Positions 9,949 through 61,922 of a stretch of DNA of 64,000 nucleotides are shown piece after piece (within the stretch, counting starts at the first letter, position 1; each line of letters starts with the position of its first letter). The notes beneath the pieces are model-generated. The model searched no databases. It was not told the DNA's origin and saw only the letters and a list, made by a program, of their open reading frames with translations. A program made the position numbers and the translations under genes. This DNA comes from Eutreptiella sp. 'Long Island Sound 2002' (lineage: Eukaryota; Protista; Euglenida): NCBI GenBank assembly GCA_964036045.1, contig OZ038378.1, forward strand, positions 179,056,001-179,120,000, in the 5' to 3' direction.

Positions 9949-10772
9949 CCCCCCCCGCCCCTTGTCGTTCCCCACGCCAGGGAAGACGGTTCCCCACCAC
10001 CCCCTGGGGGACGGTCACCAAGTGACGGTACCCCACCCCCCCCCTGGGGGACCGCACTACCACTGCACACGCACATTTGCAGGCACAGAAATTGCAGCAT
10101 AAAACGAAAGAATTGAACATAAGATACGTTCAAAGGGCTGCCCATGTACGGAGACCTACTCCTTGACCAGCTCGGTGTAAAATTTCTTGGTGCTGCTCCG
10201 CTTCACCTTGAACTCTTGCACATGCTCTCCACTTTCCACTGGAATGCTTTGGGCAGCACTCTTGGGTGGTGGTTTTGCCTTCTTGGTAAGAGGCTTGGCA
10301 GGCGCAAGCAGATTTTTGGGAACCAGTTTCCCTTCAGGAATGTCCCTTGTAAAATACAACTTGTTCCCAAAACTGTGTCCCATACGCCATACACCACGGG
10401 CACTCTTCACCCACACAACCTCCGTGTCAGCATTCAGGCCACTATCATCATCCGTCACATTTGTCCGGTCCCAGGGGGAAACATGGTTGTGTTGTCAAGT
10501 TCCATTTCAGCGAAAGTAAGCAAAATGTCCCGCCATGAGTGCCATGAGGGATACAAGTGGCAGTGCCCCACAACGCAGTCACCCGGACAACAACACAATG
10601 AGCCGCAACGAAAAATTTTGAGTTGACCAAGTGACGGTCCCCCACCCCCCCCCTGGGGAACAACAAGGGGTGGGGAACGACAAAGGGGATCAATGGTCGG
10701 TGCTGATCGACTGAATGTCCCCGCCATAGACACTTTCAGCCACGACGGGAAGGACAAAGGGGGGGGGGGGGG
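9949..10772. mobile_element. Non-autonomous TIR DNA transposon (poly-C TIR family, copy E1) inserted in the satellite
   Basis: Interrupts a unit exactly: CTCA-TA[element]TA-CACCAAC (TA at 9947-9948 and 10773-10774). Left end C9GCCCCTTGTCGTTCCC; right end GGGAAGGACAAAG14. Direct repeat ACCAAGTGACGGT.CCCCACCCCCCCC at 10017 and 10626. Confidence 0.9.
10156..10600 (-). pseudogene. Frameshifted cargo ORF of E1 (unknown protein, Tudor/SH3-like N-terminal part)
   Basis: VVWVKSARGVWRMGHSFGNKLYFTRD...HVQEFKVKRSSTKKFYTELVKE aligns with ORFs in copies at 18284-18813 and 22678-22872. Upstream PGDCV / TCIPHGTHGGTFCLLSLKWNLTTQPCFPL aligns with the ORF at 54183-54668. Confidence 0.6.
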
Positions 10773-13700
10773 TACACCAACACAGGTGACACGCAGTAAT
10801 CATGAAAATGGTAAGTGCCAGGTATGCAAGGACACTGTGGAGCAAATGTAAAAATCAAAACCTACCTCCACAGTTTGTGAAGCCAATCTGGAAAAAACAA
10901 ATGGAAACCGGGACACGGGGTTTCTTAGCTTTTCCCCCCTCTGTCTTTGCCTTCTCTGCAGTTGCAGATCCAGCAAGGCACAATCACATTCAGCACCCAA
11001 CAAGCTCAGATGAAAATTGAAATCATGAATCATATCCCAACCATTAATGATTGCATCATAGTTCATAGCCACACACAGCAGGACCCATAGCAGGCAACAA
11101 ACATCATACAGGACAAACACAACCGTGGAGGGGATGTAATGTAGTGATTGTGGAAATGGCAAACAATGGTATGGCAGTGCATGAAATACCTGGGACTGCC
11201 ATGCAGTAAACCCAATGCATTATTACATGGTACTGAGCATATCTGGCACACGCTTCTGATCATAATTCACACCACGAGAATCATGATACAGGACAAACGG
11301 TGCTTCAGGAATACAATCACAGAGACTTGAGCAGGGTATGAGTACCTTGCCTGGCTCATACACAAACACAGGTGACACGCAGTTATCATGAAAATGGTAA
11401 GTGCCAGGTATGCAAGGACACTGTGGAGCAAATGTAAAATCAAAACCTACCTTCACAATGAGTGCATCCAAGCCAATCTGGAAAAAACAAATGGAAACCG
11501 GGACACGGGGTTTCTTAGCTTTCCCCCCCTCTGTCTTTGCCTTCTCTGCAGTTGCAGATCCAGCAAGGCACAATCACATTCAGCACCCAACAAGCTCAGA
11601 CAAAAAATGAAATCATGAATCATATCCCAACCATTAATGATTGCATCATAGTTCATAGCCACACACAGCAGGACCCATAGCAGGCAACAAACATCATACA
11701 GGACAAACACAACCATGGAGGGGATGTAATGTAGTCAGTGTGGAAATGGCAAACAATGGTATGGCAGTGCATGAAATACCTGGTACTGCCATGCAGTAAA
11801 CCCAATGCATTATTACATGGTACTGAGCATATCTGGCACACGCTTCTGATCATAATTCACACCACGAGAATCATGATACAGGACAAACGGTGCTTCAGGA
11901 ATACAATCACAGAGACTTGAGCAGGGTATGAGTACCTTGCCTGGCTCATACACCAACACAGGTGACACGCAGTAATCATGAAAATGGTAAGTGCCAGGTA
12001 TGCAAGGACACTGTGGAGCAAATGTAAAATCAAAACCTACCTCCACAATGTGTGCATCCAAGCCAATCTGGAAAAAACAAATGGAAACCGGGACACAGGG
12101 TTTCTTAGCTTTCCCCCCCTCTGTCTTTGCCTTCTCTGCAGGTGCAGATCCAGCAAGGCACAATCACATTCAGCACCCCACCAGCTCAGACAAAAAATGA
12201 AATCATGAATCATATCCCAACCATTAATGATTGCATCATAGCTCATAGCCACACACAGCAGGACCCATAGCAGGCAACAAACATCATACAGGACAAACAC
12301 AACCATGGAGGGGATGTAAGCAAACAATTGTATGGTAGTGCATGAAATACCTGGGACTGCCATGCAGTAAACCCAATGCATTATTACATGGTACTGAGCA
12401 TATCTGGCACACGCTTCTGATCATAATTCACACCACGAGAATCATGATACAGGACAAACGGTGCTTCAGGAATACAATCACAGAGACTTGAGCAGGGTAT
12501 GAGTACCTTGCCTGGCTCATACACAAACACAGGTGACACGCAGTTATCATGAAAATGGTAAGTGCTAGGTATGCAAGGACACTGTGGAGCAAATGTAAAA
12601 TCAAAACCTACCTCCACAATGTGTGCATCCAAGCCAATCTGGAAAAAACAAATGGAAACCGGGACACAGGGTTTCTTAGCTTTTCCCCCCTCTGTCTTTG
12701 CCTTCTCTGCAGTTGCAGATCCAGCAAGGCAGAATCACATTCAGCACCCAACAAGCTCAGACAAAAAATGAAATCATGAATCATATCCCAACCATTAATG
12801 ATTGCATCATAGCTCATAGCCACACACAGCAGGACCCATAGCAGGCAACAAACATCATACAGGACAAACACAACCATGGAGGGGATGTAATGTAGTCAGT
12901 GTGGAAATGGCAAACAATGGTATGGCAGTGCATGAAATACCTGGTACTGCCATGCAGTAAACCCAATGCATTATTACATGGTACTGAGCATATCTGGCAC
13001 ACGCTTCTGATCATAATTCACACCACGAGAATCATGATACAGGACAAACGGTGCTTCAGGAATACAATCACAGAGACTTGAGCAGGGTATGAGTACCTTG
13101 CCTGGCTCATACACCAACACAGGTGACACGCAGTAATCATGAAAATGGTAAGTGCCAGGTATGCAAGGACACTGTGGAGCAAATGTAAAATCAAAACCTA
13201 CCTTCACAATGAGTGCATCCAAGCCAGGCTGGAAAGAAAAATGGAACCTGGGACACGGGGTTTCTAGCTTTCTGCCTCTCTGTCTTTGCCTTCTCTGCAG
13301 GTGCAGATCCAGCAAGGCATAATTACATTCAGCACCCAACAAGCTCAGACAAAAAATGAAACCATGAATCATATCCCAACCATTAATGATTGCATCATAG
13401 CTCATAGCCACACACAGCAGGACCCATAGCAGGCAACAAACATCATACAGGACAAACACAACCATGGAGGGGATGTAAGCAAACAATTGTATGGTAGTGC
13501 ATGAAATACCTGGGACTGCCATGCAGTAAACCCAATGCATTATTACATGGTACTGAGCATATCTGGCACACGCTTCTGATCATAATTCACACCACGAGAA
13601 TCATGATACAGGACAAACGGTGCTTCAGGAATACAATCACAGAGACTTGAGCAGGGTATGAGTACCTTGCCTGGCTCATACACAAACACAGGTGACACGC

Positions 13701-14704
13701 AGTTATCATGAAAATGGTAAGTGCTAGGTATGCAAGGACACTGTGGAGCAAATGTAAAATCAAAACCTACCTCCACAATGTGTGCATCCAAGCCAATCTG
13801 GAAAAAACAAATGGAAACCGGGACACAGGGTTTCTTAGCTTTCCCCCCTCTGTCTTTGCCTTCTCTGCAGTTGCAGATCCAGCAAGGCAGAATCACATTC
13901 AGCACCCAACAAGCTCAGACAAAAAAATGAAATCATGAATCATATCCCAACCATTAATGATTGCATCATAGCTCATAGCCACACACAGCAGGACCCATAG
14001 CAGGCAACAAACATCATACAGGACAAACACAACCATGGAGGGGATGTAATGTAGTGATTGCGGAACAGGCAAACAATGGTATGGCAGTGCATGAAATACC
14101 TGGGACTGCCATGCAGCAAACCCAATGCATTATTACATGGTACTGAGCATATCTGGCACACGCTTCTGATCATAATTCACACCACGAGAATCATGATACA
14201 GGACAAACGGTGCTTCAGGAATACAATCACAGAGACTTGAGCAGGGTATGAGTACCTTGCCTGGCTCATACACCAACACAGGTGACACGCAGTAATCATA
14301 AAAATGGTAAGTGCCAGGTATGCAAGGACACTGTGGAGCAAATGTAAAATCAAAACCTACCTCCACAATGTGTGTACCTACAACCTCTCGCGAATCATGG
14401 TGTCGAAACCACACTCAAGACGGGAAATAGCATGCGCGGACGAAGAGCACATGAAAGACCAAAACCTTCAGGTAGCCAGAAATGCCACGCTCTCAAACCC
14501 TTCCTTCAGAGCCAAAAAAAAAAACTCTGAAAGCACCCATACTCAAAGCAGCGCTGTTACCCCTCTCTATCGTGGAGACAATAACAGTCATAGAGCAACA
14601 TTTCCTCTGTTAGCTCTGAATACCCTCATATCGCAGCCATACCCTCACATGACAGAGGAGTACTGTGGCTATGTAACCACTACCAGATTGAGGGCAAAGT
14701 GTTT

Positions 14705-15693: not shown

Positions 15694-15696
15694 GAG

Positions 15697-16420
15697 GTCT
15701 CCAAAGCAGAGACGAGTAACGTGGCTACGAAACCCTTGCCGCGTTGGGGTCTCCAAAGTGAAGAGGACCATGCTTTTGTGCTTTGGAGAACCCAGCACAA
15801 TCGCAGTTGCATAGCTTTGTTGACCCTCTCTGGCTTGGAGACCTCTCACAGGGATTATGCAGCCATGTTGCTCCTCCGCAATTTGGAGACCCGATACCAT
15901 AAGCCAGCTTACTGCTATGGCCTGGATGGGGGTAGTAAGCAGGTCACAAAGCGCCCCACACATGCACGTCCTGGTATGCATATGCAGCAATGTTCGGCAG
16001 TTCCATCTTTTGCGGCTGAAGCCTCACAGCTGTTATACTACAATCGTGCTCATGATCATTGCTATGCTACATTTCTGCTCTGTGTGCTTCTTTCTGGCTG
16101 TTGGACCGTGTTTTGTCTACCGGACCGTGTTTTGTCTACCGCAAAGCGGTATGCATGGTACAGTACAGTAAGGTGCACTCCTGATTCCTGAAAATCACCC
16201 TAGTATAGCCATGCATAGTGCTGATCCCCATTGATCAAGCTATACAAGTTTTCAAAATCAGAAGCGGAGGGTTGTTAGGAGTCAAAACTCATGGAAACCA
16301 AAGGAGTCACTAAGTCGCTCGGTTGGGGGGGGGGGGGGGGGGTTGCACAAAATACATCCCTCTCCAAAGCGGATCAGTGCAACGTGGCCTCATGACTACG
16401 ATTGTGTTGGGGTCTCCAAA
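15697..16420. repeat. Dispersed GGTCTCCAAAG / TTTGGAGA(C/A)CC motif cluster (probable subterminal repeats of a non-autonomous element)
   Basis: Motif occurs in direct orientation at ~15696, 15748, 16360 and 16411, and inverted at ~15782, 15836 and 15882. Confidence 0.4.
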
Positions 16421-18100: not shown

Positions 18101-19059
18101 CCCCCCCCTTGTCCAAGCAACGGTAAATAACCAGGGATTGACAAAACCAATGCCTAGTGTTGCTTAGACAAGGGCGTTGCTTACGTGCCGGAACTTGCAT
18201 GGTACACGTATAGACCGGCCTGAGGGGGTTTGAAGCGGAGATGGTGGGACACAAGCAAAGGGCTGACATGTGCAACATAACACTCATGAGCAGGGATCAT
18301 TGGGAAGCAAAACCTGGCACAAACAGTTTGAAAACTTCGAACATTGCGGGTTCAAGGGCTCAGAAATGAAGCCCTTCTTGGTCCAGCTATAATGCATCGT
18401 GAACTGCTGGACGTGCTTCTTCTTCTTGCCCTGTGCCTCACCCTTTGCCGGAGGTTTGGGTGCAGGTTTTGGGGCTGGTTTTGGGGCTGGTTTTGGGGCT
18501 GGTTTTGGGACAGCAATATGCAAAGGGATGCAAGCATCATCCACCAAATCTCTGGTCCAATACAACTTTCCGTTGAAGACATGCCCCAAACCCCAAACGC
18601 CTGTATTGCCCACACAATATCCACAACCTTGTCTTTCTTGGCTCTCTTTTCGGGAGCCACCTCTGACTCCCCACCACCCTTCTTCCCATCCCACTCATAC
18701 TCAATTGCCAAATAATCTGCACCTTTGGGAGAGGGACCAATGACAATACCGCGACTTTCTGCACCGGTGGACTGCGTGTAGTGCAATGGCCAACCTGGCT
18801 TTATCCAAGACATGGTGTACTATTCTGAAAACCAAGAGGCAAAACACGCTACAAACGCCCTCTTGGCCAACAGAGCTACCTTGACACAAAATATGAACGT
18901 TGTGCATCTCAAAACCACGGTATCAGGAAGCAGACACGGCACACAGTACAATGAATTAAAAAACGCACCGCCAAAATCAACGGTGCAAAAATTGACGGAA
19001 CCAACGCCTAGTGTTGCTTGGACATAGGCGTTGCTTGGACAAGGGTGGGGGGGGGGGGG
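18101..19059. mobile_element. Poly-C TIR family copy E2
   Basis: Left C8TTGTCCAAGCAACG; right CGTTGCTTGGACAAGGGTG13. Direct repeat GCCTAGTGTTGCTT.GACA.. at 18152 and 19006. TA duplication not preserved. Confidence 0.75.
18284..18813 (-). pseudogene. Frameshifted cargo ORF of E2: Tudor-like domain + W.LGH.F.GKLY.TRD domain + (PKPA)n linker
   Basis: MSWIKPGWPLHYTQSTGAESRGIVIGPSPKGADYLAIEYEW..., then frameshift to VWGLGHVFNGKLYWTRD...PKPAPKPAPKPA...HVQQFTMHYSWTKKGFISEPL. Homologous to the E1, E3 and E4 ORFs. Confidence 0.6.
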
Positions 19060-21144: not shown

Positions 21145-21145
<1 letters not shown>

Positions 21146-21176
<31 letters not shown>

Positions 21177-21270: not shown

Positions 21271-22245
21271 CAAGAATCATCAATCCGCTCCATCCCAGTT
21301 CGTGCAACTTCCTTGCACTACAATGGCCTGGCAGCGAACAGTCTTGGTCTGGGCCTGGTCTCAGCTGTGCCTTGGTCTTGCAGCCTGCAGTCACACCACC
21401 TTTCGGACCCTTCACCGAGCTACCCCACCATTGTGCTACACAGCCAACAACCCCTTGAGCCACATGCTCAATCGCCCCACACCCAAATCAATGGCACCAA
21501 AAAAAAAATCAACCTCCTCCAGTGGTGCTTCCTTTATCCACTCGATTGGAAACCACTAATGGGCTTGACACCTACTCAGTTGCACGTCGGATCCCCCTGG
21601 GGCAGAACCCCACAGGACCTTACCACACGGAACCCCCCCCCCCCCCCCAACACTCCATACGACTTCGTCTGAACCTCCTGCCACCTTCCGGAAGTGATTA
21701 CCTTCCCGAAATTTCGGTATCAGCCCATGTGAGTCGCGGACCATACTCTTGCCTGCCCCTGGCCCCCACTGCAGCTTGCTGGTATGCCTCAGCAGGCATT
21801 GAGGCATGAATGTCTAAGATGCTGTGAGACACAGGAAACAGGGCCAGAAGCGAGCCCAGCGTGACCAAATGAACCTATAACTGAAGCGATGCACGAGACA
21901 TGGCATGGCCCGCTGCCCTTCTTGATGGTGCCACTGCAGCCACTGCAGTACACATCACCCTCCCAGTTTCTGCACAATCAATCCGAGTCAAAACCAGGAA
22001 TGTACATGTCCATTTCAGGGAAGTCTTCCAACTGCTCGGCGACGTCTAGTTCCACGAACGAAATGGGCTCCGGCACCTTGAAAGGAAAATCACCGAGCTC
22101 GACACAGATCTCCGTGCCGTTGCTGTCGAAGAACGTCGGGTTGGGAGAGGGCGTCTCAGACAGGTGCATGGCGCCGACGGAGGAGTCCTCAGAGGAGGAC
22201 CGGGACGGGCATCGGCCTGACAGACACCAGCACATGCGAGGTACA

Positions 22246-23010
22246 TCAGGCACACGCACTGAATCACATCAGCACACACACCAAGGCACAGCAGCACATG
22301 CACTGACGCACAGTGATACACACCAGCTCACGCACTGAGGCCCACAAGGCACACACACTCATACACATCAGCACACACACCGAAGCACACCAGCACACGC
22401 ACTGAGGTACCCTCCCCCCCCCTTGTCCTCCCGCCCCAACACAGGGAAGACGCCCCCACCCCCCACCCCCAGGGGACAGTTGCCAAGTGATGCCCCCTAC
22501 CACTACTGTCCACGCACACTATGGGACACAGAAATTGCAGCGGAAAACGAAATAAAAAGCATAAGAAATGTTGGTGTGCAGAGATTGTCAAGGTCAAAAT
22601 ACAAAAACAAATAAAAGCAGGTGTGCCAATGATATGAAAATCATGCATGCTTCGATGGGCTGCCAATGTGACGAACCTTACTCCTTGAGGGGCTCGGTGT
22701 AAAATTTCTGGGTCCTGCTCCAATCAGGGATAGGTGCCTTCTCATTTGGACCAAGGTTCTCCACCTGATCCCCCACAGTGACCTGCAACACCATTTTGGT
22801 GTTTACCAAGTTACGGGAAGGACAAGCGGGGGGGAAGGACACAGGGGGGCGAGGGGACATCAGCACACGCACTGAGGCACACTACCACATGCACTGAGGT
22901 ACACAAGCACACACACTGACACAACAGCACACACAGTGAAGCACACTGAGGCACACCAGCGCACGCACCGAAGCACACACCAACGCACGAAGTGCTGCAA
23001 ACCAGATAAA
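22246..23010. repeat. CA-rich degenerate minisatellite (CAGCACACGCACTGAGG-like units), interrupted by E3
   Basis: Repeated CACACGCACTGAGG / GCACACAC units on both sides of 22410-22856. Confidence 0.7.
22410..22856. mobile_element. Poly-C TIR family copy E3 (internal deletion derivative of the E1 type)
   Basis: Preceded by TA (22408-22409). Left ~150 bp aligns with the E1 left end (CAGGGAAGACG...CACAGAAATTGCAGC..AAAACGAAA). Carries CTCCTTGA..GCTCGGTGTAAAATTTCT as in E1. Right end GGGAAGGACAAGCG7...GGGG. Confidence 0.8.
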
Positions 23011-27000: not shown

Positions 27001-27130
27001 TTCTATACTTGGTTAACATGGAGTTCGACTCTACGTGCGACCTACCTCTGGCCTGCAAGCTCAAATGCAAAAAATTGCACTGTCAGAAGACACACACACA
27101 TGCCCACCGCATGCACACACGGCGGAGCCC

Positions 27131-46877: not shown

Positions 46878-48109
46878 GTGTCGTTGCGAAATTTCGCAAC
46901 AACACACAAGAATTGACGAATTACATACACAGGATATCATTGCCATGTTTGTTGACGGCCACCTTTGCAAGATCTTGCAGACCGACACACTATGTGTTTG
47001 CAAGATCTTGCAAACACATAGTATGTATGGATGCGAGATCTCGCAAAGACACGCACTGCGTTTTTGCGAGATCCCGCAAAGACACGAAGCGTGCCTCTGC
47101 GAGATCCTGCAAACACAATACACACAGATCTCGCAAAAGCATGCTTCGTGTCTTTGCGGGATCTCGCAAAGGTAGCATTGTTGTCCTTCCGAAATCTAGC
47201 ACTAGCAGGAGACCTGCTGTTGCAAATTCACAATGGCAGCAAATCGGGTACTCTTAATATGTTGCCTTCATGTGTACACACCCACCGAATCGCATGCAGT
47301 GCTTGTCCTTAGGTTTGCAATGTGTGAGGGTACCCCTCACTTGGATTACCGCCATACAATAGCTAATTGCAAACTGACTACCGTGGTCACAAATAAAGTA
47401 TTCCAATTTAATGCCCTAGACTACTTCCCTTGCCTACCATCTCATTTGCTCAGAATAGACACCGTTCACCGCCAATCTGAGAACTTTGAGCGCTGACTAT
47501 CATGCTGATAAGCACGCTATTTTGCATGAAGGCAACGACTCCGACAGCAATGGTTGTCAGAACCCCTACAAAAAGCAAGATGCATACCTTGCGTTTGAGG
47601 TGCATTTAAAAAAAGAACGCAGTGTGCTTGTCAGCATGATAGTCAGCAGCAGATGCCCTCAGGGTGGCGGTGGACGGTGTCTATTCGAGACAAGAAGAAG
47701 GGAGGTGCCAAGGAAAGCCATGTGGCAGATAAATTTTGAATACCAGATTTGTGACCATAGTGATGAGGTTGCAATTAGCTATTGCATCACGGTAATCCAA
47801 GTGAGGGACACCCTCACACATTGCAAACCTGAGGACAAGCAATGCATGCAACATGAAGGGTGTGTACAAATGAAGGTAACAGATTAACCTTATCCGATTT
47901 GCTGCCAATGTGATCACCACACTAGCAGGCCTCCTACTAGTAGATTTTGCAAAGGCAGCAATGCCACCTTTGCAAGATACTTTGTGAGATCTTGCAAGCA
48001 AATAGTGTGTGTGTGTTTAGGAGATGTCGCAAAGGTGGCTGTCAACAAACATGGCAATGATATACCATGTATGTACTTCGTGTGTCGTTGCGAAATTTTG
48101 CAACGACAC
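46878..48109. mobile_element. Foldback/long-TIR non-autonomous element with 28-32 bp palindromic ends and an internal palindrome array
   Basis: 46878-~47410 is the inverted copy of ~47730-48109. Both ends are GTGTCGTTGCGAAATTT(C/T)GCAAC(A/G)ACAC. TGC(G/A)AGATC(T/C)(C/T)GCA repeats ~33 bp apart at 46965-47170. Confidence 0.75.
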
Positions 48110-49758
48110 ACCCGAACCCTAAGCCATGCTTTGGAGCATGCCATGGCGAGATTTGGCAATGGCATGTTACACCACCATCTGAAAAAGGAAGCCCCCAAGC
48201 CAAAACTGAAAAAGGGGTTTTCGGGTAACAGGGGCCTATGTGCGGTGAAAACATGCCAGACGTTTCCGCCGTCCTAGGCAAAAGGAGGCAAAAAACATCT
48301 GCTTGGCACAGCGCTGTGCGAGGTCGCAGCCTCCAATGTTTCCGAAGTCTCGACACCCCCCCCCCCCCCCGAATGCGCAGACCAGGGATTGACCATTGTG
48401 TCTGAGTGTGTCCAAATAAGACAACAGCCGGCCAGTTCACTATTTCGGCTTGAGCGGGATTCAGTATCACATGCGTGAAATGGTGCTGGTGCTTCTGCTG
48501 CAGTGCCCTGCCTGAGAACTAGGACTACTGCGTGTCCAGGTAGACACATTCTTGACCCCAACCAAGGAAGGGCTGTGACATTGCAAGGAAATGCAGGGCC
48601 AGGTTCCGAGGCTATCCCTGGGGAAATTTTGCCATGGGCACTATAAGCCCATTGGACCTCAGTTCAAACAACAGGTGGAGGGGTGAAGATTTGCGGTCAA
48701 AGAGCTTTTTGGAATTTTGAAAAACTGGGGACTTTTGCGGTTCTCATGAACAATATGAAAAATACCTCATTTGCCAAACAAAAATAAGCTAGTTCCTGAA
48801 GTTTTGCAGTCCCAAAATAACAACAACCCAAAACAGAAAAACATGCAGAGGCAACTAGTGAAATGTCACTGAAGGTCAATCCAAAAAAAAAAAAATTGGA
48901 ACACTGCGAAATTGGCAATTTCCAAGAAATTTTCAACAATTTCAAAAAAATTCTTGAAATTTCAAAAAAACAAAAAAAAGCCATTTCCAAAGGAAAAAAT
49001 GCAAGAACTCTCTTGCCTTCGGGATGGCACCTCAAAGAGAGACGAGTGATGTCGAGGCTGTTGTGGAAACCGTTGTGGGAAAGTCATACACTGTAGGCCA
49101 AGCAAGTTTTGTCCACCTTGGTGAAAACAGGCCCAAAGCGGCGCTTTCGGGGGCCAATTAGCACCACTAGGAGAGCCTAGTTGGTGCTGCATAGCTCCCC
49201 ATGAGTTTATACGTACTCAGATTGTCACCAAATGATCACCCAACAACGGCCCAAGGGTCTCCAGAGGTCGTCAAAGGTCGAAAGTCACCCATAAATCGCG
49301 ACTTTTCAAACAATCCATGGTGGCATGAAAACGGCTCACTCCTCACATTGGGGCTTCAATTGGTCGGTAGGCTGAGCTGGATGTCCCCGCCATAGACACT
49401 TCCAGCCATTGTTCTTCAGCAAGTTCACAGCAGTGCGTCCGGGTTTTTGCTAGGCGACTGTCCCGGTGCTTCCGCCAGTGTTCGCTTGTCCCTACCTTCC
49501 ATATGTACACTGTCGTACCCAAGTTTGCGGGGCTTTGACTCTACAGGGTCAGTGGCGTGCATGGTGGTCAGGGTCAGTCCCTGGGATACCTGCTTGACGC
49601 TGGCCCCATTCGGCCGGTACTCCTGGGATCTTGGTTCGGGCTCACTGTGCCCTGGTGGTGCTGGTTAGCGCACATTCAACACACAGCCATTCAGGGGGGG
49701 GGGGGGGGTTGCTTGGGTGGGTTTGTTGCGCTGATGGTGCCCATGTGGGGCACTGGGT

Positions 49759-52392
49759 TTATGGAGTGGTGCAGTGAGAACACATGGTGCTGCAGGACAG
49801 TGTGGAGGCGTCGTCAGACATGCGTGACGCTGGCGATGTGTGCCTTGATGAGGTGTGGGAGGACGGCATGCTTTCGGTGTCTGCCTGGCTTGGTCCCTGC
49901 TCCCAGTCCATTTCAACCAGCTGCAGTTCTGCCAACAGATTTGCTGCTACACGTGGCGACATGGGTGATGGTGGTTGGGGGGTGTGAAATGTAGTTCTGC
50001 GTTCCAGCGCCTCCCACGGTGTGTGCATGCAGTGCACTGTGCTCGGTGTGGCCAATGAGGTGTGAGGGAGGCGGGCTCGGAGGTTGGAGAGTGGCGTGTA
50101 GGCGACGGTGTGTGGTGTGAATCTCTTCGGGTATTTGGGGTTCCTGGCCGGGGTGCAATCTTCAATGTCCTGTGACGGTGTCGGTCGGCGAGGGGTTCTG
50201 GGGGGGGGTGGGGGGGTGCTGTACTCTTCCGCTGTGTGCCGCAGTGGTGTGAGCTGCGACTCTGGGAGGGGGGGCTCGTCAAGCTCTGGGGCCTCTTCCT
50301 CCAGTAGGTCCGCTAAGGATTGTACATCATCATTGTCTGGTGGCTGTTGTTGCCCTGTTTGCGAGACGGAGACGTGTCCAAAAAGGAGGGGGGATTTTCG
50401 CCGACCGACATCCGCCAGATGATCCGCTCTGGTATTGCCTTTGATTCCTATGTGGGAGGGGATGTGCATCCAGTGGGTGGGGGAGTGTGCTGATTCAATT
50501 AGGTCCAGTACCTGGGTCCACAGGTCCACGTGGCTGACCGGGCCCGCGGATCCTGTCCACTTGTGCCTGCGCCACTTTTGGGCCTTGCCGTGGACACCGT
50601 CTACAACGAGTAAGGAGTCAGGGCAGATCAGGACAGGTTTGTCTGGTGACCGTGCTTGCAGCGCGCGCAGGGCTGCCCTCAGTTCCCCTCTGTTGTTGGT
50701 TTGGGGTTCACTCACTGGAATTGGTTCGGCTGTATCCCTGGAATCCCCAAAGGAGACGCCATACCCTCCCACTCGTCCTACTACCTCATGGTCCTCCGAT
50801 GATCCGTCGGGATATATGACTTCCCACCCTGCTTCGACATACCGCTGGATTATTTGTTCATAGTACTCACAGAGTTCTTGTTTGTGTGTTTCTTTTCTCC
50901 GTTTCTTGCGTGCCGGGGCTACCAGTGTGGGGGGGGGGAGGGAGGAGTTGTGTGCTGTGTGGACCCTCGGGTGCTGGATCGTGAGCGTGTTCGGATCACT
51001 CAGAGAATCGAGTGCCTGCAAGAACAACTGTGTTTCTGATTTGGGGAAGGAGGGGAAGGGGTGGTCCACCCAATCGCTGAGGTTGGCTCTCCACTGTTTC
51101 AGAAACTGTTGCCACGGGGGTTGGAAGGTTGGGTGATGAAATTTGCATCTGCTGCGGACCATCCAGTTTGCCCTGACCGCAGACCAGTAGAGCAGCCCTA
51201 GGGGGGATGAGACAGAGAGTGCAGGTTGATCCCATAAGATTGCTTCTGGGTCTGCTGTGGAGCCGTCCGCTAGCGCTGCAGGTCCCACACATTGTTGGGC
51301 AATGAAAAATGCAGGTTGCAGAAATTTACAGTGCAGGGTGGCATGCTTGATTGTTTCTTGAACCCCTGGGTGTAGTGGGCATGCAGTGCCATTTGGCTGC
51401 CAACTGGCCAGCCTGGTGCCCACCGTGAGTTTGTGCCAGAGCGCTAGTTGGATGAACTGGGTGTCTCTGGGAGGGAGACGCAACTTCGCCCATGCTTGCC
51501 AGGTTTCCGCCGTCTGTCTGGGCGGTTCAGGGGTCAAGGACATTAGGTAATGCAACATGTGCCGTTTGTTCCATTCTGACCAAAACATGGGGCTTGCTTC
51601 CTTTAATTTCGTGTGGGGCGCTGCTGCTTGGATTTCTGTTATGCACGCTTTGTAAACCGGCGCCCAAGTGGGGGGCAGGAGGGCAGAATACTCTGGGATT
51701 TCAAGTAGTTGTCCCAGGGTGGTGACACCTTTGCGTAGCAGGGAAGGGGAGTAGTAGGAGTTGGCTTTGGTGTCGCGGAATAATGCTGAGTGCCATGCAG
51801 GCAATTTGACATACTGATCCAGAGTCGGGACTGGTACTGGTGCATGTTTGCGCAGGAGGGAAAATGCCTTGCACGAGGTGCCCAGAAAGGGATAAGTCTT
51901 CCACGGTATCGGCCCCAGCTGGAGCCAGGGCAGGTGTTGGAGGTTAAGTGAGATCCCCATTTGGCTGGTCCACTGTAAAAAATGGTTTCTAGACAGCTCC
52001 GGGACACTCAGAATTTCAGAGATTGCTTGAAAGAAAGGGGTGGCATGCTGCCACAGCAGATATATATGCGGTTGGGGCAGAAGTGCTCCCCCTTTGTTTC
52101 GGGGCAGCTGTAGTATGGGCAATGTGAGTCCCCAGCTGCTGATGTTGAGTGCCTGTTTGTAGATGCTGCTCAGCTGGGCAATAACTGAGGTGGTGGGGAA
52201 GTATGCGCGCGCCGGGTAGATCAATAGAGGGAGCACCCACTCTTGGAGCAGGGCTACCCTCTCGTCCAGCGTGAGGGGTAGGGCCTTCATAAACTGTGCT
52301 CGTTTGAGTGCGCGTGCAAGCAGGGGGGCGTAGGCTTCCTCCGGTGTGACATGCCCAATCAAATTGCCCAGGTATTTGGTTTTTTGCTTCAC
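49759..52392 (-). CDS. 5'-truncated non-LTR (L1/Tx1-like) ORF2: RT C-terminus/thumb, zf-RVT/CCHC and RNase H
   Basis: Open for 877 codons. Begins at the KYLG motif; CPLHPGVQETIKHATLHC zinc finger; RNase H motifs YPDGS, QTNNRGEL, CPDS and HIPSHIGIKGNTRADHLA (~50400-50830); TP/SP-rich tail. Confidence 0.9.
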   Translation of the reverse strand: MKQKTKYLGNLIGHVTPEEAYAPLLARALKRAQFMKALPLTLDERVALLQEWVLPLLIYPARAYFPTTSVIAQLSSIYKQALNISSWGLTLPILQLPRNKGGALLPQPHIYLLWQHATPFFQAISEILSVPELSRNHFLQWTSQMGISLNLQHLPWLQLGPIPWKTYPFLGTSCKAFSLLRKHAPVPVPTLDQYVKLPAWHSALFRDTKANSYYSPSLLRKGVTTLGQLLEIPEYSALLPPTWAPVYKACITEIQAAAPHTKLKEASPMFWSEWNKRHMLHYLMSLTPEPPRQTAETWQAWAKLRLPPRDTQFIQLALWHKLTVGTRLASWQPNGTACPLHPGVQETIKHATLHCKFLQPAFFIAQQCVGPAALADGSTADPEAILWDQPALSVSSPLGLLYWSAVRANWMVRSRCKFHHPTFQPPWQQFLKQWRANLSDWVDHPFPSFPKSETQLFLQALDSLSDPNTLTIQHPRVHTAHNSSLPPPTLVAPARKKRRKETHKQELCEYYEQIIQRYVEAGWEVIYPDGSSEDHEVVGRVGGYGVSFGDSRDTAEPIPVSEPQTNNRGELRAALRALQARSPDKPVLICPDSLLVVDGVHGKAQKWRRHKWTGSAGPVSHVDLWTQVLDLIESAHSPTHWMHIPSHIGIKGNTRADHLADVGRRKSPLLFGHVSVSQTGQQQPPDNDDVQSLADLLEEEAPELDEPPLPESQLTPLRHTAEEYSTPPPPPRTPRRPTPSQDIEDCTPARNPKYPKRFTPHTVAYTPLSNLRARLPHTSLATPSTVHCMHTPWEALERRTTFHTPQPPSPMSPRVAANLLAELQLVEMDWEQGPSQADTESMPSSHTSSRHTSPASRMSDDASTLSCSTMCSHCTTP

Positions 52393-52479
52393 AGGGATCC
52401 CATGCGTCTGTAGCTGTGCAATGGAGTCTCACATTGGGGGGGGGGGGGTCTTCGAAACCTTGACATAGGCCAAGCTGGT

Positions 52480-54127: not shown

Positions 54128-54909
54128 CCCCCCCCCCCCCCCCCGGTACAAGCTACGCCAAAGAACGGAATTATTACGGTCCCTACGCCCACCGTAGCTT
54201 GGACAAAGGCGTAGCGTGCGCACAACACATACTACTACTGGCACACACGTGCATGTGCGCATGCGCATGGTATGAGTGCACCTTGCCCTCCGCCCACATT
54301 TCCAATGGCATGCAAACACAAGAAAGCCTCGGGAACATGAAAATTTCAGGTTCACACCCATGTTGGCACAAGCAATGAAGGATGCGAAGCCTACAAATGT
54401 TCGGCTTGGAAACCCTTCTTGCGATCATACACCATGCGGAACAATTGCACATGCTCACCACTTGAAGATGTCTGAACTCGATTCTTGGGAGGGGGGCACA
54501 AGGGTGTGTGACCATCTGCCCACCCTTCATGTACTCCAACACCGCAAATTGGTCCCTCTTCTCCGATGGTCCCTTCATTGTACCATCCACACGGTCACCG
54601 GTGGAACATGTGAAAATAACTGGACGCCCAGGTTCAAAAAGAGAAGATTGCCTGGTGAGCTGATGCAAGAAAGGGGAATATAAAGCACAAATATTCCCAA
54701 ATTCAGATCCATGTGGGTTGAAGTGGGCAAAGACTCACAAATGTGTCCATGGCTCCATGTAATTGGCAAACGTGACGACAAACCCATGTCTTATGTGGCC
54801 GCACTACATCTTGTACGCAATTAAAATTACGGACACAATTATTACGGTCCCTACGTCTACTGTAGCTTGGACAAGGGCATAGCTTTTACAAAAGGGTGGG
54901 GGGCGGGGG
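54128..54909. mobile_element. Poly-C TIR family copy E4 with Tudor-like cargo (minus strand, ~54450-54640)
   Basis: Left C17GGTACAAGCTAC; right GTAGCTTGGACAAGGG...GGGGG followed by TA. Direct repeat AATTATTACGGTCCCTACG...GTAGCTTGGACAA at 54169 and 54837. ORF FEPGRPVIFTCSTGDRVDGTMKGPSEKRDQFAVLEY aligns with E2. Confidence 0.7.
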
Positions 54910-56902
54910 TACAACTACTCCAAGTGCACAGACAGATACCCACAGAGCTTACTCACTTGGATTGGCCCACAGATGTTGCCCCTGTGTGTCGTGCACGCAC
55001 TTGTCCTGTGTTGGGTTTTGCCTGTACACAGGATTGGCTGCACTTTGTATGCACTTAGGGTCGAATGTTCCCGGCACAATACACACGTCACACCCACTAT
55101 GATCGAATGCCTTCCGGGCATGGCAGAGCGTCTGCACTACTACATGAAGGAATCACACATGTTATGCCAGCATGACGCATGGGCCTCTGGTCAACTCAGC
55201 CTGTGAGTGCACATGTGCTGTACATGAATGGACCTTCGGCTTTGCGGGGTTCTCCCGAGTACACTCAATGACACCTTGAGCGTCAGGGACTCAAAAAAAA
55301 AAAGAAGAAATTCACTGAGGGATGATTTTTTTGGTGATGAGGCTGTTGTCATGTTTGGACTTTGGGCTTGCCATGTGTGAGTATCAGGATTATGCATGTA
55401 AAGTTCCATTGCAGCTGAATGCAGTGACATCAAGTCCTGTGTGAGGGCAAAGTCCAACATGGGATAAGTGCATTTTTTTTTGTTCCGACACTGGTGAGTT
55501 CGGCCATCAAGGCAGACAATGTACTTACGCAGCAATGGCCTAGAGGTATGTACAGTAAAGTCAGCTTAACCAATGGGTGGGATGCGGGTAAGGCAGTTCT
55601 CCACAGAGGGAGAGCCCAATGGGGGCTCAGGACCTGTATGTACTGTACACTCCATGCAGGTGGTGGGGCCTACCACGACCACAGAGGGTCAACACCTAGA
55701 AAACTATGGAGTTGTGACTAGATCAAAAAAAACTAAGATCAAAGAGCGACTAACAGTCAGGAACTACAGGGAGCCCCTAGTGCAGAATCGAAAAACTCAT
55801 ACACTGGGGTGGAAAGTGGTTGTAGGGGTGTATCCCTCAATGCAGAGCCGATACACTGGGGCGGTATCAGAAGTGGATCTCCCGAATAGGGGACCCAGTG
55901 AGTTGAGTGAAGGGGAGGTCAACGCCGTCTCTGTCGGGTGACCCCGTAAGCTGGACAGCAGCCGGACTAGGTAGGTGCAAGCACCGCTGTTTACAGACAC
56001 GGACATTGGGGGACAGCGGGCGCCGACGCTTCAACTGTAGAACGCGCAGGGCCGCCAACTCGCTCTCCAGATACTGGCCCTTCTCTCGCCAGGCTACCTC
56101 CTGCCAGTGTTCAGTGACTGTGACAACCAACAACCAACATGGGATAAGTGCATGTGGGACGCGCAGGGGACATCATATGTGGGGCTTGTGTGCATGTGGA
56201 TAAGTCCTGTGGCTTTGTCATACTTTGGTGGCGTGGCGGCGCATCGTGGGTGTAGCGTGAGTGCACGTGCATGTGTGTGTCATTCACGTGTCCCGGGGAG
56301 CCGGTGAACTGAGAGTCGTGAGGGTGAGCATAGTGGCCGCGGTTAGGTCAAGGAACTTACTGGTGGGCGGCCTGTGTGTGGCCAAGTCACAGAACGGTCA
56401 CGTGTCATCCTAATCATCCGAGGTGATGCACAAGCACAGTGGTGACACGGTGAGTTGAGTTGAGTTGAGTCGCCCCTGCAGTCCAGTGTGCAAAGGCGTC
56501 ATGGGAGGCCCGGCAGGGAGGAGTAACAACTGCGGCCCTGGTATAGCAGGTCCGACCGGCACTTGTCCATGGAGGCACATCTGCTCTCGTTGTAGCCTTC
56601 TTCCAGCCCAAGTTCCTACAGGGGGCCCTTATACCGTGGATGCCCATGGATGGCCCGGAGCTCCCGGAGGAGCTCGTCCGTCGACGGGACGGACGGGGGC
56701 TGGGTGGGGCGGTAAGGGTGGACGCATTCGGCTGCACAGGCGGACCGTCTGGTCTCCTTTCCTGGTGTCAGGCGTGTAACTGCCCAATGATACGGGTCCC
56801 CAAAGTAGTGAGCCGCTCCGGTCACCAGCGGGGTGTGATCACATGTGTGATCACATAATCAAGATCCAATGCAGTACGACCGGCCGCAATTTGACCCTTT
56901 AG

Positions 56903-59472: not shown

Positions 59473-61520
59473 TAAGTACAACTACGGCCGACGAAGACGG
59501 TGTCTCCACTGTGACCATCCGAAGCACCACAACTGGCGATGGTCTTTCTGTGGCCGACGGAACCGATCTGACTGAGACCGATGCTACTGGTGTTGAACTC
59601 CAGCTCCAGTGTCTGTGGTGCCGCCTGTGCCGGAGAAACCCTCGCTGCCAACACTGCAAGAGCAGGACACCGGCAGGGCACAGCCAAAACAGCCGTGTGA
59701 GCCGCCTGCGGGATCCTAGACGTGCAGCTGTGGAAATGTGAACTATCCATCCCGAGGTGTCTGCAACTAGAGAGGATGTAATCTAAGCCGACCCGCGGCC
59801 AACCCCACTGTCGTCGTTGATCAAGCAGGGAGGATTGTCCGCGATGCCACCCATGCCCCCACCATTGCATCTCACGCGTGCGACACCGTGACCACCTCTG
59901 CGGGACGCACAACGCCCTCACGGGCCCAGCCTGCCCCTGTGGGAGGGGTCCATCCCGGTGCCGCTGGCGCTAGCCGAGTTGGCTCCTTTCCTCTTCGGCG
60001 GCTGTACCGTTGGGCTCCCATGTCCGATGGCATCAGCAAGTTCATCCGCAAAGGACCTCAAGAACTCAAGGCTCTGCGGCTTGGGCACCGCCGGCCGTAT
60101 CTCGACCATCATGCTGGTCAATCCTCCTTGACGACCCTGTATTGGGGCCGACTCATGTTGCACAGCCATGAAAAACGTGGGTGGGTTGAGGAGACACATA
60201 GTCATAGGTGCAGACTGCGTGGTGGGAGCAGCTCTGGCTGGGAGCCTGGGCCGATCGGAGGAGGTCCCTGGGGACCTCTCTCTCTCTCTCTTCCCATGCA
60301 GGCAGGAGTTCTCACTCACGTAGGCGAGGAATTAGATTCCCGCCGCACTGCGTCCTGTAAAAGACATCCGGTGTGTTACCTTACATGGGGGCACCCAGTA
60401 GCGTGCATTCAAGGCCTAGTACTCTGGGGTGTCATAGCCATCGCGTGGCCATTTAGCCCCGACCCTTCTCCCCTAACGCATGCACAGCTGTTGCATCGGG
60501 CACGACAAACAGTAAGGACGACTGCATTCATCCCAATGTTCGGACAATAAGGTTGTCGCACGTTAATTGATGCACGTCATGGCACGGTGGCGGTGAGTAC
60601 GGAGTTCTTTGACCACCCGTTGTGATGTGTGCTGCCATACCTTATCCTTGTCCTGCTAGGCCCTGTCGTGGTCCGCACTGCGCGCCTTCATGGCTTTTCG
60701 GACTCCTACCTTCCACCGCTGCAAACACTCTTGCTTCACGGTGTGGGAGTAATAGCGTAATACTGCTTTACTACTTCGAGTGATAGATCAGTAAAGGAGC
60801 TCCGTGGCTTGTAGCCACTTTGTCATCTGCCGTGCCCGATGTACGTCCAGGTGACACAGGTCATCATCTGGTGTCCCTAGAGGCGAAGTGCGGAAAGATG
60901 TGCCCGCATGGCAACCTGCAATTGAGGGTGGAGGCCTAGGAGGCCACACCAAACGAGCAACAAACCACCAATAGACACCAAACGGGCACCCACGAAGGAA
61001 AGGAGGGGGTTGTAGCTCACTGGCAGTTTCAAGTCATTTTGACCAGACACACACCCCTTCAAACCGGCTCACCATAAACAATAGGTCTACCTGGGGTGCC
61101 CCCCCCATGTGCTCCCAGTTGCAAAAGAACGGCTATAAGGCAAGAGAACGGCTATAAGGTGCACGAGATCACGATCGCATGGTCGCCCAAAGGCGCCCAA
61201 ACAAAGATTCGCTCCTGTTTGGCAACGGACATTGCATCCAAGTTGCTGGACGCCGCACGGGAGACCTGGAGAGTACCCTGCAAAGGGGACCTTTACAAGG
61301 GCAAGGAGTCCGCCTGGAGCTACTCGGGGTGGGCCGCCGTTAACCCACTGCGTAACGATGACCCGTGTCCCCGGCCCTAATAGGGGTAGAACAGCTGGGC
61401 CACTTGCAGAAGGGCCAGGTGCCAGTACACAATCCACACACCTTTGTTTTTTGAGTTCGTGACGCTCAAGGTGTCATTGGATGTACTCGGGAGAACCCCG
61501 GAAAGCTGAAGGTCCATTTA

Positions 61521-61922
61521 CCCCCCCGCCCCCCCCGTGTCCAGCAAACAATTGGGCCCGAAATTAATACAGTCCGAACGGGAGTGTTCGTTGGACACGC
61601 CGTTCGGTGCGCGCGACAATATTGTGAAACGGCGGTAACACGTCCCTCGGCACAAGATACCCAGCCCATTCAGTCATGGTGGCCAATAGAGGTCCTGTAG
61701 TTGAGGGACACCGTTCCCTCACAACTTGCTTTACAAATTTGCCCACCAATACTACAAGATACATCACAACAGCCCCTCATTTCCGCAATCCTTTAACCTG
61801 AAACCTCCGTTCTGAAATCTGGGACCTAAGTCAGTACCCAATTAATTAGGTCCCAAATTAATACAGTCCGAACGGAAGTGTTCGTTGGACACGGTGTTCG
61901 TTGGACACGGGGGGGGGGGGGG
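61521..61922. mobile_element. Poly-C TIR family copy E5 (402-bp MITE-like)
   Basis: TA on both sides (61519-61520 and 61923-61924). TIR C-run+GTGTCCA.C.AACA. Direct repeat AAATTAATACAGTCCGAACGG.AGTGTTCGTTGGACACG at 61561 and 61855. Confidence 0.85.

What the first reader, a model, noticed from the sequence alone, without database searches (positions are those of the whole stretch)
9949..61922. Family of TA-targeting, poly(C)-capped TIR elements carrying a shared unassigned Tudor-like cargo gene and no transposase
Seen: at least five elements (9949-10772, 18101-19059, 22410-22856, 54128-54909, 61521-61922) share one architecture. Each has a C-run + (T/G)TGTCC-type TIR, and TA is on both sides of E1 and E5 and on one side of E3 and E4. 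Four have a 30-50 bp repeat near both ends in the SAME orientation; in E2, E4 and E5 it carries the TIR core inverted. Their DNA is diverged, yet four encode pieces of one protein: PG(x)P/V...STG...GPS...lEY (Tudor/SH3-like), VW..GH.F..KLY.TRD, a PK-rich linker and HVQ.F...TKKFYTEP. Established: TA duplications typify IS630-Tc1-mariner; CCC termini with 2-bp duplications and subterminal repeats occur in the CMC/EnSpm group. Inference: this is a possibly undescribed lineage whose non-autonomous copies keep an accessory, possibly chromatin-reading, protein under selection.
Basis: partly seen in the sequence, partly recalled or inferred. Interest (0 to 1): 0.75.

Follow-up and report, generated by a model that had tools for sequence, protein, structure and literature searches.

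The report
Cut-down copies of pogo-type transposon
The five poly-C-ended elements are real jumping DNA, but their shared "cargo gene" is only what is left of the two ends of their own cut-and-paste enzyme gene; full 2.5-3 kb copies that encode the enzyme lie elsewhere in this euglenid alga's genome.

Summary
E1-E5 are TIR elements capped by C/G homopolymers. They insert at TA and carry same-orientation subterminal repeats. E1 sits in a 594-bp satellite: 20 of 23 uninterrupted units read ggctcaTAcac at the site, and E1 has TA on both sides.

The interpretation (no transposase, accessory cargo, CMC/EnSpm link) does not hold. The same genome has 2.5-3.1 kb elements with the same ends and TA duplications. 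One (L071) has an intact 680-codon gene. Its product has five parts:
- an N-terminal Tudor/SH3-like barrel
- a helix-turn-helix region
- a DDE_1 (pogo-type) core, D307/D439/D475, so DD35D
- an acidic linker
- the conserved tail VVW.K.ARG.WG..H.F..KLYFTRD ... HVQ.F

E4 is that element minus 1,780 internal bp. E1, E2 and E3 keep matching end pieces. Longer E1- and E2-lineage copies keep parts of the catalytic core.

So the window holds non-autonomous deletion derivatives of a euglenid pogo-like (IS630-Tc1-mariner) clade. Codon-position counts give no clear sign of selection on the truncated frames.

Three features remain unusual: the obligatory poly-C caps, the Tudor-like N-domain and the unassigned C-terminal module. 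I found none of them in two pogo surveys.

This scan reached the same conclusion before on other DNA of this genome (s1-210143, s1-197901).

The parts
9949..10772 (-). E1: 824-bp non-autonomous element inserted in the 594-bp satellite. TA duplications lie at 9947-9948 and 10773-10774. Its outer 84 bp (10689-10772) carry an E3-like terminus outside the usual end.
   Evidence: Empty-site comparison with the other satellite units. Alignment to L064-L069, L073 and L074, which start at E1 position 85.
10159..10458 (-). E1 remnant of the transposase C-terminal tail (VVWVKSARGVWRMGHSFGNKLYFTRD ... HVQEFKVK..TKKFYTELVKE)
   Evidence: tblastn gives 88-90% identity to aa 334-447 of L064 and 325-424 of L065, and 47% to L071 aa 583-680. 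There are at least 6,981 first-look candidates genome-wide.
10458..10686 (-). E1 leader and first codons (..MFPPGTG) of the transposase gene, frameshifted against the tail
   Evidence: tblastn to L065 aa 36-110, 81-83% identity. ORF frames.
18101..19059 (-). E2: 959-bp non-autonomous element of the TTGTCCAAGCAACG subfamily. Its flanks are CA and AA.
   Evidence: at least 1,891 first-look candidates; 332 exact end matches.
18679..18813 (-). E2 remnant of the N-terminal Tudor/SH3-like domain (MSWIKPGWPLHYTQSTGAESRGIVIGPSPKGADYLAIEYEWDGK)
   Evidence: it aligns with the N-domains of L071, L065 and L070.
18352..18633 (-). E2 remnant of the C-terminal module and PK-rich linker, in another frame (1-bp frameshift near 18600-18620)
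   Evidence: 38-58% identity to L070 aa 603-693.
22410..22856 (-). E3: 447-bp element with TA at 22408-22409 only. It keeps only the last ~28 codons of the tail (22639-22722).
   Evidence: (57% identity to L064 aa 420-447).
54128..54909 (-). E4: 782-bp deletion derivative of an L071-type autonomous element. The deletion junction is at 54473/54474. TA is on the right side only.
   Evidence: blastn: E4 8-346 matches L071 element 1-332 and E4 347-775 matches 2113-2541, at 83-84% identity.
54474..54659 (-). E4 remnant of the N-terminal Tudor/SH3-like domain (aa 1-62 of the L071 protein, 85% identity)
54394..54495 (-). E4 remnant of the last 34 codons (GEHVQLFRMVYDRKKGFQAEHL), out of frame with the N-terminal piece
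   Evidence: 76% identity to L071 aa 649-682.
61521..61922 (.). E5: 402-bp MITE with no coding remnant. TA duplications lie at 61519-61520 and 61923-61924.
   Evidence: I19; no protein match.
55145..55302 (-). Inverted paralogue of E5's flanks without the element (an empty-site-like copy)
   Evidence: (I3, I4; 89-91% identity).
1647..1653 (+). TACGGTA at the satellite position where E1 is inserted in another unit: a possible excision footprint (TA + C..GG + TA). A second copy lies at 8762-8768.
   Evidence: 2 of the 23 uninterrupted units carry it, and 20 have a single TA.

Best explanation
E1-E5 are non-autonomous copies of a euglenid clade of pogo-like (IS630-Tc1-mariner group) cut-and-paste transposons. 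E1-E4 are internal-deletion derivatives and E5 is a MITE with no coding remnant.

The autonomous elements are 2.5-3.1 kb long. They end in C/G homopolymer caps followed by a 13-14 bp lineage-specific core, and that core is repeated subterminally. They duplicate TA on insertion. They carry one gene for a ~680-aa transposase with five parts:
- an N-terminal Tudor/SH3-like barrel
- a helix-turn-helix DNA-binding region
- a DDE_1-type RNase H-fold core with a DD35D triad
- an acidic Ser/Asp linker
- a conserved C-terminal module

Internal deletions remove the catalytic middle. They leave the ends that the transposase recognises plus the first and last exonic stretches. Those stretches are the 'shared cargo protein'.

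Shown: the anatomy, the TA duplication, the homology and the deletion relationship.

Inferred: the short copies are mobilised in trans by full-length relatives, the subterminal repeats are transposase-binding sites, and the deletions arise by abortive gap repair. That last step is the usual route for DNA transposons (established knowledge, recalled).
For: - TA duplication: E1 has TA on both sides and 20 of 23 uninterrupted satellite units have a single TA at the site. L068, L069, L070 and L071 have TA on both sides.
- Full-length relatives: the L071 element (TA|C9-TTGTCTAAGCTACG ... G11|TA, 2,541 bp) has one uninterrupted 680-codon frame. L070 is 2,694 bp, L072 about 3.15 kb and L074 2.28 kb.
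- E4 aligns to both ends of the L071 element and lacks exactly 1,780 bp in between.
- The pieces in E1-E4 map to aa 1-62 and aa ~583-682 of these proteins.
- Graded deletion series in the E1 lineage: L074, L064/L073, L065, L066, then E1-type. Longer E2-family copies keep the third-D region.
- Superfamily: Pfam DDE_1 over 157-159 of 177 profile positions in two proteins (E about 1e-3, just below cutoff) and above cutoff in relative P0040. Profile hit P0121 scores 102 bits for DDE_1 and aligns to L071 with E 9e-12, matching NGDET/NMDET, DGAPAH/DSFSAH and ACDK/PVDN.
- The AlphaFold core has pLDDT above 90. The eight best Foldseek matches are Mos1 and Sleeping Beauty transposase chains, and SETMAR/Metnase follows (prob 1.0).
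- About 775 first-look candidates for the catalytic part, against at least 6,981 for the tail. That is the usual excess of non-autonomous copies.
Against: - DDE_1 scores for the two full-length proteins lie below Pfam's cutoff (18-19 against 22 bits). HTH_Tnp_Tc5 is weak (E 0.05 to 0.001).
- No fully intact autonomous copy was retrieved for the E1, E2, E3 or E5 lineages: L074 is broken, L064 is 5'-truncated and L073 carries an internal deletion.
- Transposition, trans-mobilisation and catalysis are untested.
- The E1-type frame is in phase in other copies (L067, L068) and very abundant, so a function for that small protein is not excluded.
Confidence: 0.9

Rival explanations
1. One reading: an undescribed TIR lineage without a transposase, whose non-autonomous copies carry an accessory, possibly chromatin-reading, protein kept under selection.
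For: The window holds no transposase core. The protein motifs are conserved between subfamilies whose DNA has diverged. The N-terminal piece has a Tudor-like predicted fold.
Against: - The pieces are collinear with the two ends of a 680-aa DDE transposase encoded by elements with the same termini.
- E4's junction is out of frame and E2 is frameshifted.
- E2-family copies diverge by 5.9, 5.0 and 6.5% at codon positions 1, 2 and 3, which fits neutral decay.
Confidence: 0.03
2. Some truncated frames, above all the in-phase E1-type MFPP..TDDDSD..VVWVKSARG.. tail protein, are expressed and act on transposition. They could titrate a partner of the C-terminal module, as the truncated KP protein represses P elements.
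For: - At least 6,981 first-look candidates exist for the E1 tail. 140 of the 150 best have no stop.
- In 9 E1-lineage copies, codon positions 1 and 2 differ from the consensus by 2.1 and 2.0%. Position 3 differs by 3.1% and the non-coding parts by 3.5-4.8%.
- Gene callers predicted many such small proteins in public assemblies.
Against: - The copies were chosen by protein similarity, which biases towards intact frames.
- The difference between position 3 and positions 1-2 is small (28/893 against 37/1783).
- The window's own E1 is frameshifted.
- Other lineages (E2, E4) show no such pattern.
- There are no expression data for these frames.
Confidence: 0.1
3. The elements belong to the CMC (CACTA/Mirage/Chapaev, EnSpm) group, as suggested by CCC termini, 2-bp duplications and subterminal repeats.
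For: C-rich termini and subterminal repeats are present.
Against: The duplication is specifically TA. The transposase matches DDE_1, Mos1 and Sleeping Beauty, and no CMC-type family appears in the Pfam or fold searches.
Confidence: 0.01

Closest known systems
pogo superfamily of IS630-Tc1-mariner transposons (Fot/Fot-like and Passer families, DD35D; Gao et al. 2020, PMC7386202)
   Same: TA target duplication, TIRs, and a single transposase gene. The core is DDE_1-type with a D..D..35..D spacing. There is an N-terminal helix-turn-helix region with a weak HTH_Tnp_Tc5 signal, an acidic C-terminal region, and abundant MITE-like deletion derivatives.
   Different: - The termini are C/G homopolymers of about 7-22 nt in every lineage seen.
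- An extra N-terminal Tudor/SH3-like barrel and a conserved C-terminal module (VVW.K.ARG.WG..H.F..KLYFTRD ... HVQ.F) are present.
- Pfam scores are at or below cutoff.
- Euglenids are not mentioned in either of the two pogo surveys searched.
- Placement among the named pogo families was not tested by phylogeny.
Mos1 mariner and Sleeping Beauty transposases (solved structures 3HOT, 5CR4)
   Same: They are the best structural matches to the predicted catalytic core (Foldseek prob 1.0, target-normalised TM 0.53-0.57 for the catalytic domains). They also use TA targets. The 3-nt footprint model fits TACGGTA.
   Different: Only 12-14% sequence identity. Those are DD34D or DD34E enzymes with paired-like DNA-binding domains. 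They have no Tudor-like domain or C-terminal module.
Internally deleted non-autonomous DNA transposons (for example Ds versus Ac, KP versus P)
   Same: Both ends are retained and the middle of the transposase gene is lost. Short copies outnumber full ones.
   Different: No repressor or other activity of the truncated frames has been shown here.
Tudor / royal-family and SH3-like barrels (TDRD3, PHF1/PHF19/MTF2, SGF29; retroviral integrase C-terminal domain)
   Same: The predicted five-strand barrel of the N-domain superposes on them (rmsd 2.6-3.0 A over 54-59 columns; Z up to 7.8).
   Different: No sequence-family match was found. The Z scores are in the range that a common small-barrel arrangement gives. 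An aromatic cage and ligand binding were not tested.

Membership tests
IS630-Tc1-mariner group / pogo superfamily | TA target-site duplication | tested here: met
   E1 has TA on both sides and 20 of 23 uninterrupted satellite units have a single TA. E5, L068, L069, L070 and L071 have TA on both sides. 22 of 63 E2-family ends are flanked by TA.
IS630-Tc1-mariner group / pogo superfamily | Transposase core homologous to DDE_1 (RNase H fold) | tested here: met
   DDE_1 scores 18.2 and 19.3 bits over profile positions 17-175 and 19-175 (below the 22-bit cutoff). P0040 scores 25.1 bits and P0121 102 bits. BLASTP of L071 against P0121 gives E 9e-12. The top Foldseek matches are Mos1 and Sleeping Beauty.
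IS630-Tc1-mariner group / pogo superfamily | DDxD catalytic triad (pogo: third residue D, spacing about 29-36) | tested here: met
   D439 and D475 are invariant in 8 sequences. D307 (NGDET), D439 and D475 align with the NMDET, LDSFSAH and PVD motifs of P0121. 35 residues separate D2 and D3. Catalysis itself was not tested.
IS630-Tc1-mariner group / pogo superfamily | N-terminal HTH DNA-binding domain (CENP-B_N/HTH_psq, HTH_Tnp_Tc5) | tested here: inconclusive
   HTH_Tnp_Tc5 gives E 0.05 in L070 and 0.001-0.002 in P0121 and P0105, all below cutoff. The helical region aa 180-230 is modelled with pLDDT above 90. BLASTP of this region against P0121 gives E 5e-11.
IS630-Tc1-mariner group / pogo superfamily | Short excision footprint made of the TA duplication plus terminal nucleotides | tested here: inconclusive
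   TACGGTA replaces TA in 2 satellite units at E1's own target position. This fits TA + C(C/G)G + TA, but it could be one unrelated 5-bp insertion that was later copied.
Non-autonomous internal-deletion derivative | Same termini as an autonomous element, collinear with it apart from one internal gap, and no intact transposase | tested here: met
   E4 against the L071 element: 1-332 and 2113-2541 are retained at 83-84% identity. The window has no catalytic-core match.
CMC / EnSpm (CACTA, Mirage, Chapaev) | CMC-type transposase | tested here: not met
   No CMC family appears in the Pfam scans of 3 full-length and 88 related proteins. The fold matches are Tc1/mariner enzymes.
Tudor / royal family | Five-stranded SH3-like barrel | tested here: met
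   The N-domain model has pLDDT 84.6. Matches to TDRD3, PHF1, PHF19 and SGF29 give target-normalised TM 0.65-0.71. MTF2 and PHF19 give Z 7.8. This is a predicted structure only.
Tudor / royal family | Sequence membership in a Tudor family, and an aromatic cage that binds methylated Lys or Arg | tested here: not met
   No Pfam match at E up to 10. Atlas feature scores are 0.78-0.88, so leads only. Cage geometry and binding cannot be tested with these tools.
   No WW hit in Pfam at E up to 10, in the PDB profile search or in the Atlas. The W..GxxLYFTRD..W.P spacing is WW-like by eye only. The region is modelled at pLDDT 40-55.

The most novel reading that the evidence does not exclude
The clade is an undescribed pogo family in which three added features work together. 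The N-terminal Tudor-like barrel and/or the conserved C-terminal module would tether the transposase to a chromatin mark or host factor and so steer TA integration. The C/G homopolymer caps would be a required cis-element at the cleavage sites. In addition, the very abundant in-phase E1-type tail protein could modulate this tethering.
Probability: 0.2. Interest if true: 0.55.

Novelty: new variant of a known kind. Interest (0 to 1): 0.3.

Why it matters
For the finding as written, it shows that an apparently new "cargo-carrying, transposase-less" lineage is the ordinary outcome of internal deletion in a Tc1/mariner-group transposon.

The remaining interest is that a very abundant protist pogo clade departs from the usual pattern in three ways:
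- Its ends are homopolymers.
- Its enzyme starts with a Tudor/SH3-like barrel.
- Its enzyme ends in a conserved module of unknown fold.

Reader domains fused to integrases are known to steer LTR retrotransposons. A comparable fusion in a TA-targeting DNA transposase would give a simple system for studying chromatin-guided cut-and-paste integration. It would also help annotate a 2.3-Gb genome that holds thousands of these copies.

Tried and rejected
- Pfam on the window's small frames alone gave nothing.
- Pairing exact E2 ends genome-wide gave one 7.3-kb candidate. It turned out to be a short element beside a nested LINE.
- A majority consensus of 11 short E2-family copies gave no intact frame.
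- A word-based protein search found only two unnamed ENA proteins.
- The PDB profile search with the whole protein hit only low-complexity Ser/Asp runs.
- The WW-domain lead for the C-terminal module was not supported.
- A generic C-run/G-run TIR pairing script recovered only E3 and E5, because the caps of the others are interrupted.
- 48356 (C15) and 49694 (G15) share only GAATG and were not accepted as an element.
- P0105, a Euglena gracilis transcript, matches this genome at only 37-58% identity among the candidates scored. It therefore gives neither the species nor expression of these particular lineages.
As a result:
  - No phylogeny against named pogo families was made.
  - No unbiased dN/dS was computed.
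  - No genome-wide census was made.
Full report
**Setting.** The window is G000:C1:179056001-179120000 of a 2.28-Gb euglenid genome (earlier notes call it a Euglena-like alga). I do not name the species. The one named public relative, a Euglena gracilis transcript (P0105), matches this genome at only 37-58% identity among the candidates scored.

E1 gives the cleanest test because it lies in a ~594-bp satellite that fills window 1-14,400.
- Of the 23 uninterrupted units, 20 read ggctcaTAcac at the insertion point. One reads GA and two read TACGGTA.
- The E1 unit reads ggctcaTA[C8GC4...G14]TAcac.
- So the C and G runs belong to the mobile DNA, and TA is duplicated.

E5 also has TA on both sides. 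An inverted paralogue of its flanks (55145-55302) lacks the element and has one TA.

E3 and E4 have TA on one side. E2 has CA and AA.

Across 63 ends of the E2 family in other loci, TA is the immediate flank 22 times. The next commonest flanks are AA, CA and TG, each one change from TA.

The subterminal repeats are in the same orientation at both ends. In E2, E4 and E5 they contain the TIR core inverted.

The 18-nt E2 end occurs 332 times in the genome, against 0 for its reversed control.

**What the "cargo" is.** The small frames have no Pfam match, but they are very abundant.
- The E1 tail has at least 6,981 first-look candidates.
- The E2 N-terminal piece has at least 1,696.

Some hits lay in much longer open frames. 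Fetching them showed frames of 344-447 aa (L064-L066). In these, a stretch reading LYTLDGAPPH ... QGCDKAHINKAFG lies between the "N-terminal piece" and the "C-terminal piece".

Searching the genome with that middle stretch found about 775 candidates, some in frames of up to 694 aa. Two of them are complete elements.
- **L071:3124-5664** reads TA|C9-TTGTCTAAGCTACG ... CGTAGCTTAGACAA-G11|TA. It is 2,541 bp long and has one uninterrupted 680-codon frame from its ATG.
- **L070:2399-5092** reads TA|C13-GTGCCCAAGAACC ... G14|TA. It is 2,694 bp long and has a 694-aa frame. One in-frame stop lies upstream of it, inside the N-domain.
- **L072** (about 3.15 kb) and **L074** (2.28 kb, E1 lineage, broken) are further near-full copies.

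The L071 protein begins with the same sequence as E4's N-terminal piece and ends with the same GEHVQLFRMVY.RKKGFQAEHL. At the DNA level:
- E4 8-346 aligns to L071 element 1-332.
- E4 347-775 aligns to L071 element 2113-2541.
- Both alignments are at 83-84% identity.

So E4 is that element minus 1,780 internal bp.

tblastn of the full proteins against the window hits only aa 1-62 and aa ~583-682 equivalents, in E1-E4. It hits nothing of the core.

The E1 lineage shows a graded deletion series: L074, then L064/L073, L065, L066, and the 0.74-kb E1-type. Longer E2-family copies (L003, L005, L006) still hold the region around the third catalytic residue.

**Which transposase.** Four lines of evidence point to pogo-type DDE_1.
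- Pfam DDE_1 matches both full-length proteins over 157-159 of 177 profile positions. The scores are just under the cutoff (18.2 and 19.3 bits, E about 1e-3).
- A profile of six family members found 1,426 proteins in the 1.84-billion library. The 150 best listed are mostly short fragments. Among the members scanned, P0040 passes the DDE_1 cutoff and P0121 scores 102 bits.
- BLASTP of L071 against P0121 gives E 9e-12 for the core and 5e-11 for the helix-turn-helix region. It aligns NGDET/NMDET, DGAPAH/DSFSAH and ACDK/PVDN. That gives the triad D307, D439, D475 with 35 residues between the last two. D439 and D475 are invariant in the family alignment.
- The AlphaFold model has pLDDT above 90 for aa 340-550 and 180-230. 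Its eight best Foldseek matches are Mos1 and Sleeping Beauty transposase chains. SETMAR/Metnase follows at ranks 11-17.

Gao et al. (PMC7386202) characterise pogo by DDxD. They report DD35D in the Fot/Fot-like and Passer families, and HTH_Tnp_Tc5-type DNA-binding motifs.

With the TA duplication, I file the clade under pogo-like ITm transposons. Placement among the named pogo families was not tested. No CMC/EnSpm signal appeared anywhere.

**The added parts.**

*N-domain.* The N-domain (aa ~8-62) is conserved across four lineages at G30, Y43, H52 and A55. Modelled alone, it reaches pLDDT 84.6.
- It superposes on Tudor domains of TDRD3, PHF1, PHF19/MTF2 and SGF29, and on the SH3-like C-terminal domain of RSV integrase. 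The target-normalised TM for the Tudor domains is 0.65-0.71, with rmsd 2.6-3.0 A.
- The best Z is 7.8, with KOW and PWWP barrels close behind. The tool notes that such Z values can reflect only a common small-barrel arrangement.
Family membership and ligand are open.

*C-terminal module.* The module VVW.K.ARG.WG..H.F..KLYFTRD......P, a PK-rich spacer and G(E/Q)H.Q.F is conserved in all lineages.
- It has no Pfam, PDB or Atlas assignment.
- It is modelled at low confidence.

*C/G caps.* The caps are present in every lineage seen. These lineages are only 35-50% identical in protein, and the caps vary from about 7 to 22 nt. That suggests a conserved feature whose length drifts by slippage. Its role is unknown.

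**Selection on the truncated frames.** The evidence is mixed and does not show selection.
- E4's junction is out of frame, and E2 and the window's E1 are frameshifted.
- Eleven DNA-selected E2-family copies differ from their consensus by 5.9, 5.0 and 6.5% at codon positions 1, 2 and 3. This fits neutral decay, though the sample is small.
- Nine E1-lineage copies differ by 2.1, 2.0 and 3.1% at the three positions. Non-coding DNA differs by 3.5-4.8%. These copies were picked by protein similarity and include longer, possibly autonomous-lineage copies, so the slight deficit is not evidence.
- The E1-type deletion is in phase in other copies (L067, L068). I therefore keep a KP-like regulator as a 10% rival.

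**Possible footprint.** Two satellite units read TACGGTA where the others read TA, at the position E1 occupies in its own unit. For Tc1-family elements the canonical footprint is the duplicated TA around three terminal nucleotides. In Sleeping Beauty it is TAC(A/T)GTA (recalled knowledge). For CCC...GGG ends this predicts TA-C(C/G)G-TA, which is what is seen. It may be a single event copied by satellite turnover, so I call it suggestive.

**Known or new.**
- Neither of the two broad pogo surveys mentions euglenids. Neither mentions chromodomains, and one has no Tudor-domain mention either. The Gao survey was not checked for these domain terms.
- Full-text searches for Euglena transposons, and for Tudor with pogo transposase, found nothing relevant.
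- Within this scan, two earlier follow-ups on other DNA of the same genome reached the same conclusion (s1-210143, s1-197901). I reached it independently before reading them.
- Other notes report pogo-like enzymes of this genome fused to chromo, SAM or WW domains. I did not test these.

**Verdict.** The main interpretation is replaced by an ordinary mechanism. What remains is a new variant of a known kind, of modest interest.

Noticed in passing
window 1-14400: About 25 units of a ~594-bp satellite in two sequence variants (about 70% alike over part of the unit). It has a strong A-over-T strand bias (AT skew about 0.2). E1 is inserted in one unit.
   Followed up: partly
window 10689-10772: E1's outer right end is composite. 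The usual E1-family terminus (..TTTGTCGTTCCCC) lies about 84 bp inside. The real transposed end is an E3-like terminus (C14-TTTGTCCTTCCCGTCG on the other strand). This suggests use of a related lineage's end.
   Followed up: partly
window 49759-52392 (-): An 877-aa open frame with zf-RVT and RNase H domains: a LINE fragment. A G15 run (C15 on the coding strand) lies about 50 nt beyond its stop at 49694-49708, and a C15 run lies at 48356. Whether the LINE ends in a homopolymer tail was not examined.
   Followed up: no
window 16325-16342, 21633-21648, 35263-35279, 52436-52448, 62101-62112, 62155-62172, 62878-62908, 63203-63217: Many further C or G runs of 12-18 nt have no paired TIR in the window. 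62090-62114 reads TTGTCCA-C12-TA, with the core on the 'wrong' side of the run. Some may be solo or rearranged ends of the same superfamily.
   Followed up: no
window 46878-48109: A ~1.2-kb region bounded by 30-nt inverted repeats (GTGTCGTTGCGAAATTTCGCAAC..., 93%) and full of internal palindromes built on GCGAGATCTCGCAAA. It is probably a different TIR element family.
   Followed up: no
window 55145-55302 and 61443-62000: An inverted duplication of about 155 bp (89-91%). One copy holds E5 and the other does not.
   Followed up: partly
L061:1451-6927 (-): A LINE with endonuclease, reverse transcriptase and RNase H frames (271, 893 and 646 aa) lies between a short E2-type element and a solo E2-type right end. 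This mimicked a 7.3-kb 'long element'.
   Followed up: yes
P0083 (1,976 aa, ENA): A predicted protein with nine separate matches to the helix-turn-helix part (profile positions 34-103) of the family profile. It could be a gene call across tandem elements or a host protein built from repeated transposase DNA-binding domains.
   Followed up: no
L070:2399-2723: The otherwise long-framed L070 copy has one in-frame stop inside its N-terminal Tudor-like domain (..SDGSLV*ATVLGPGAQ..).
   Followed up: partly
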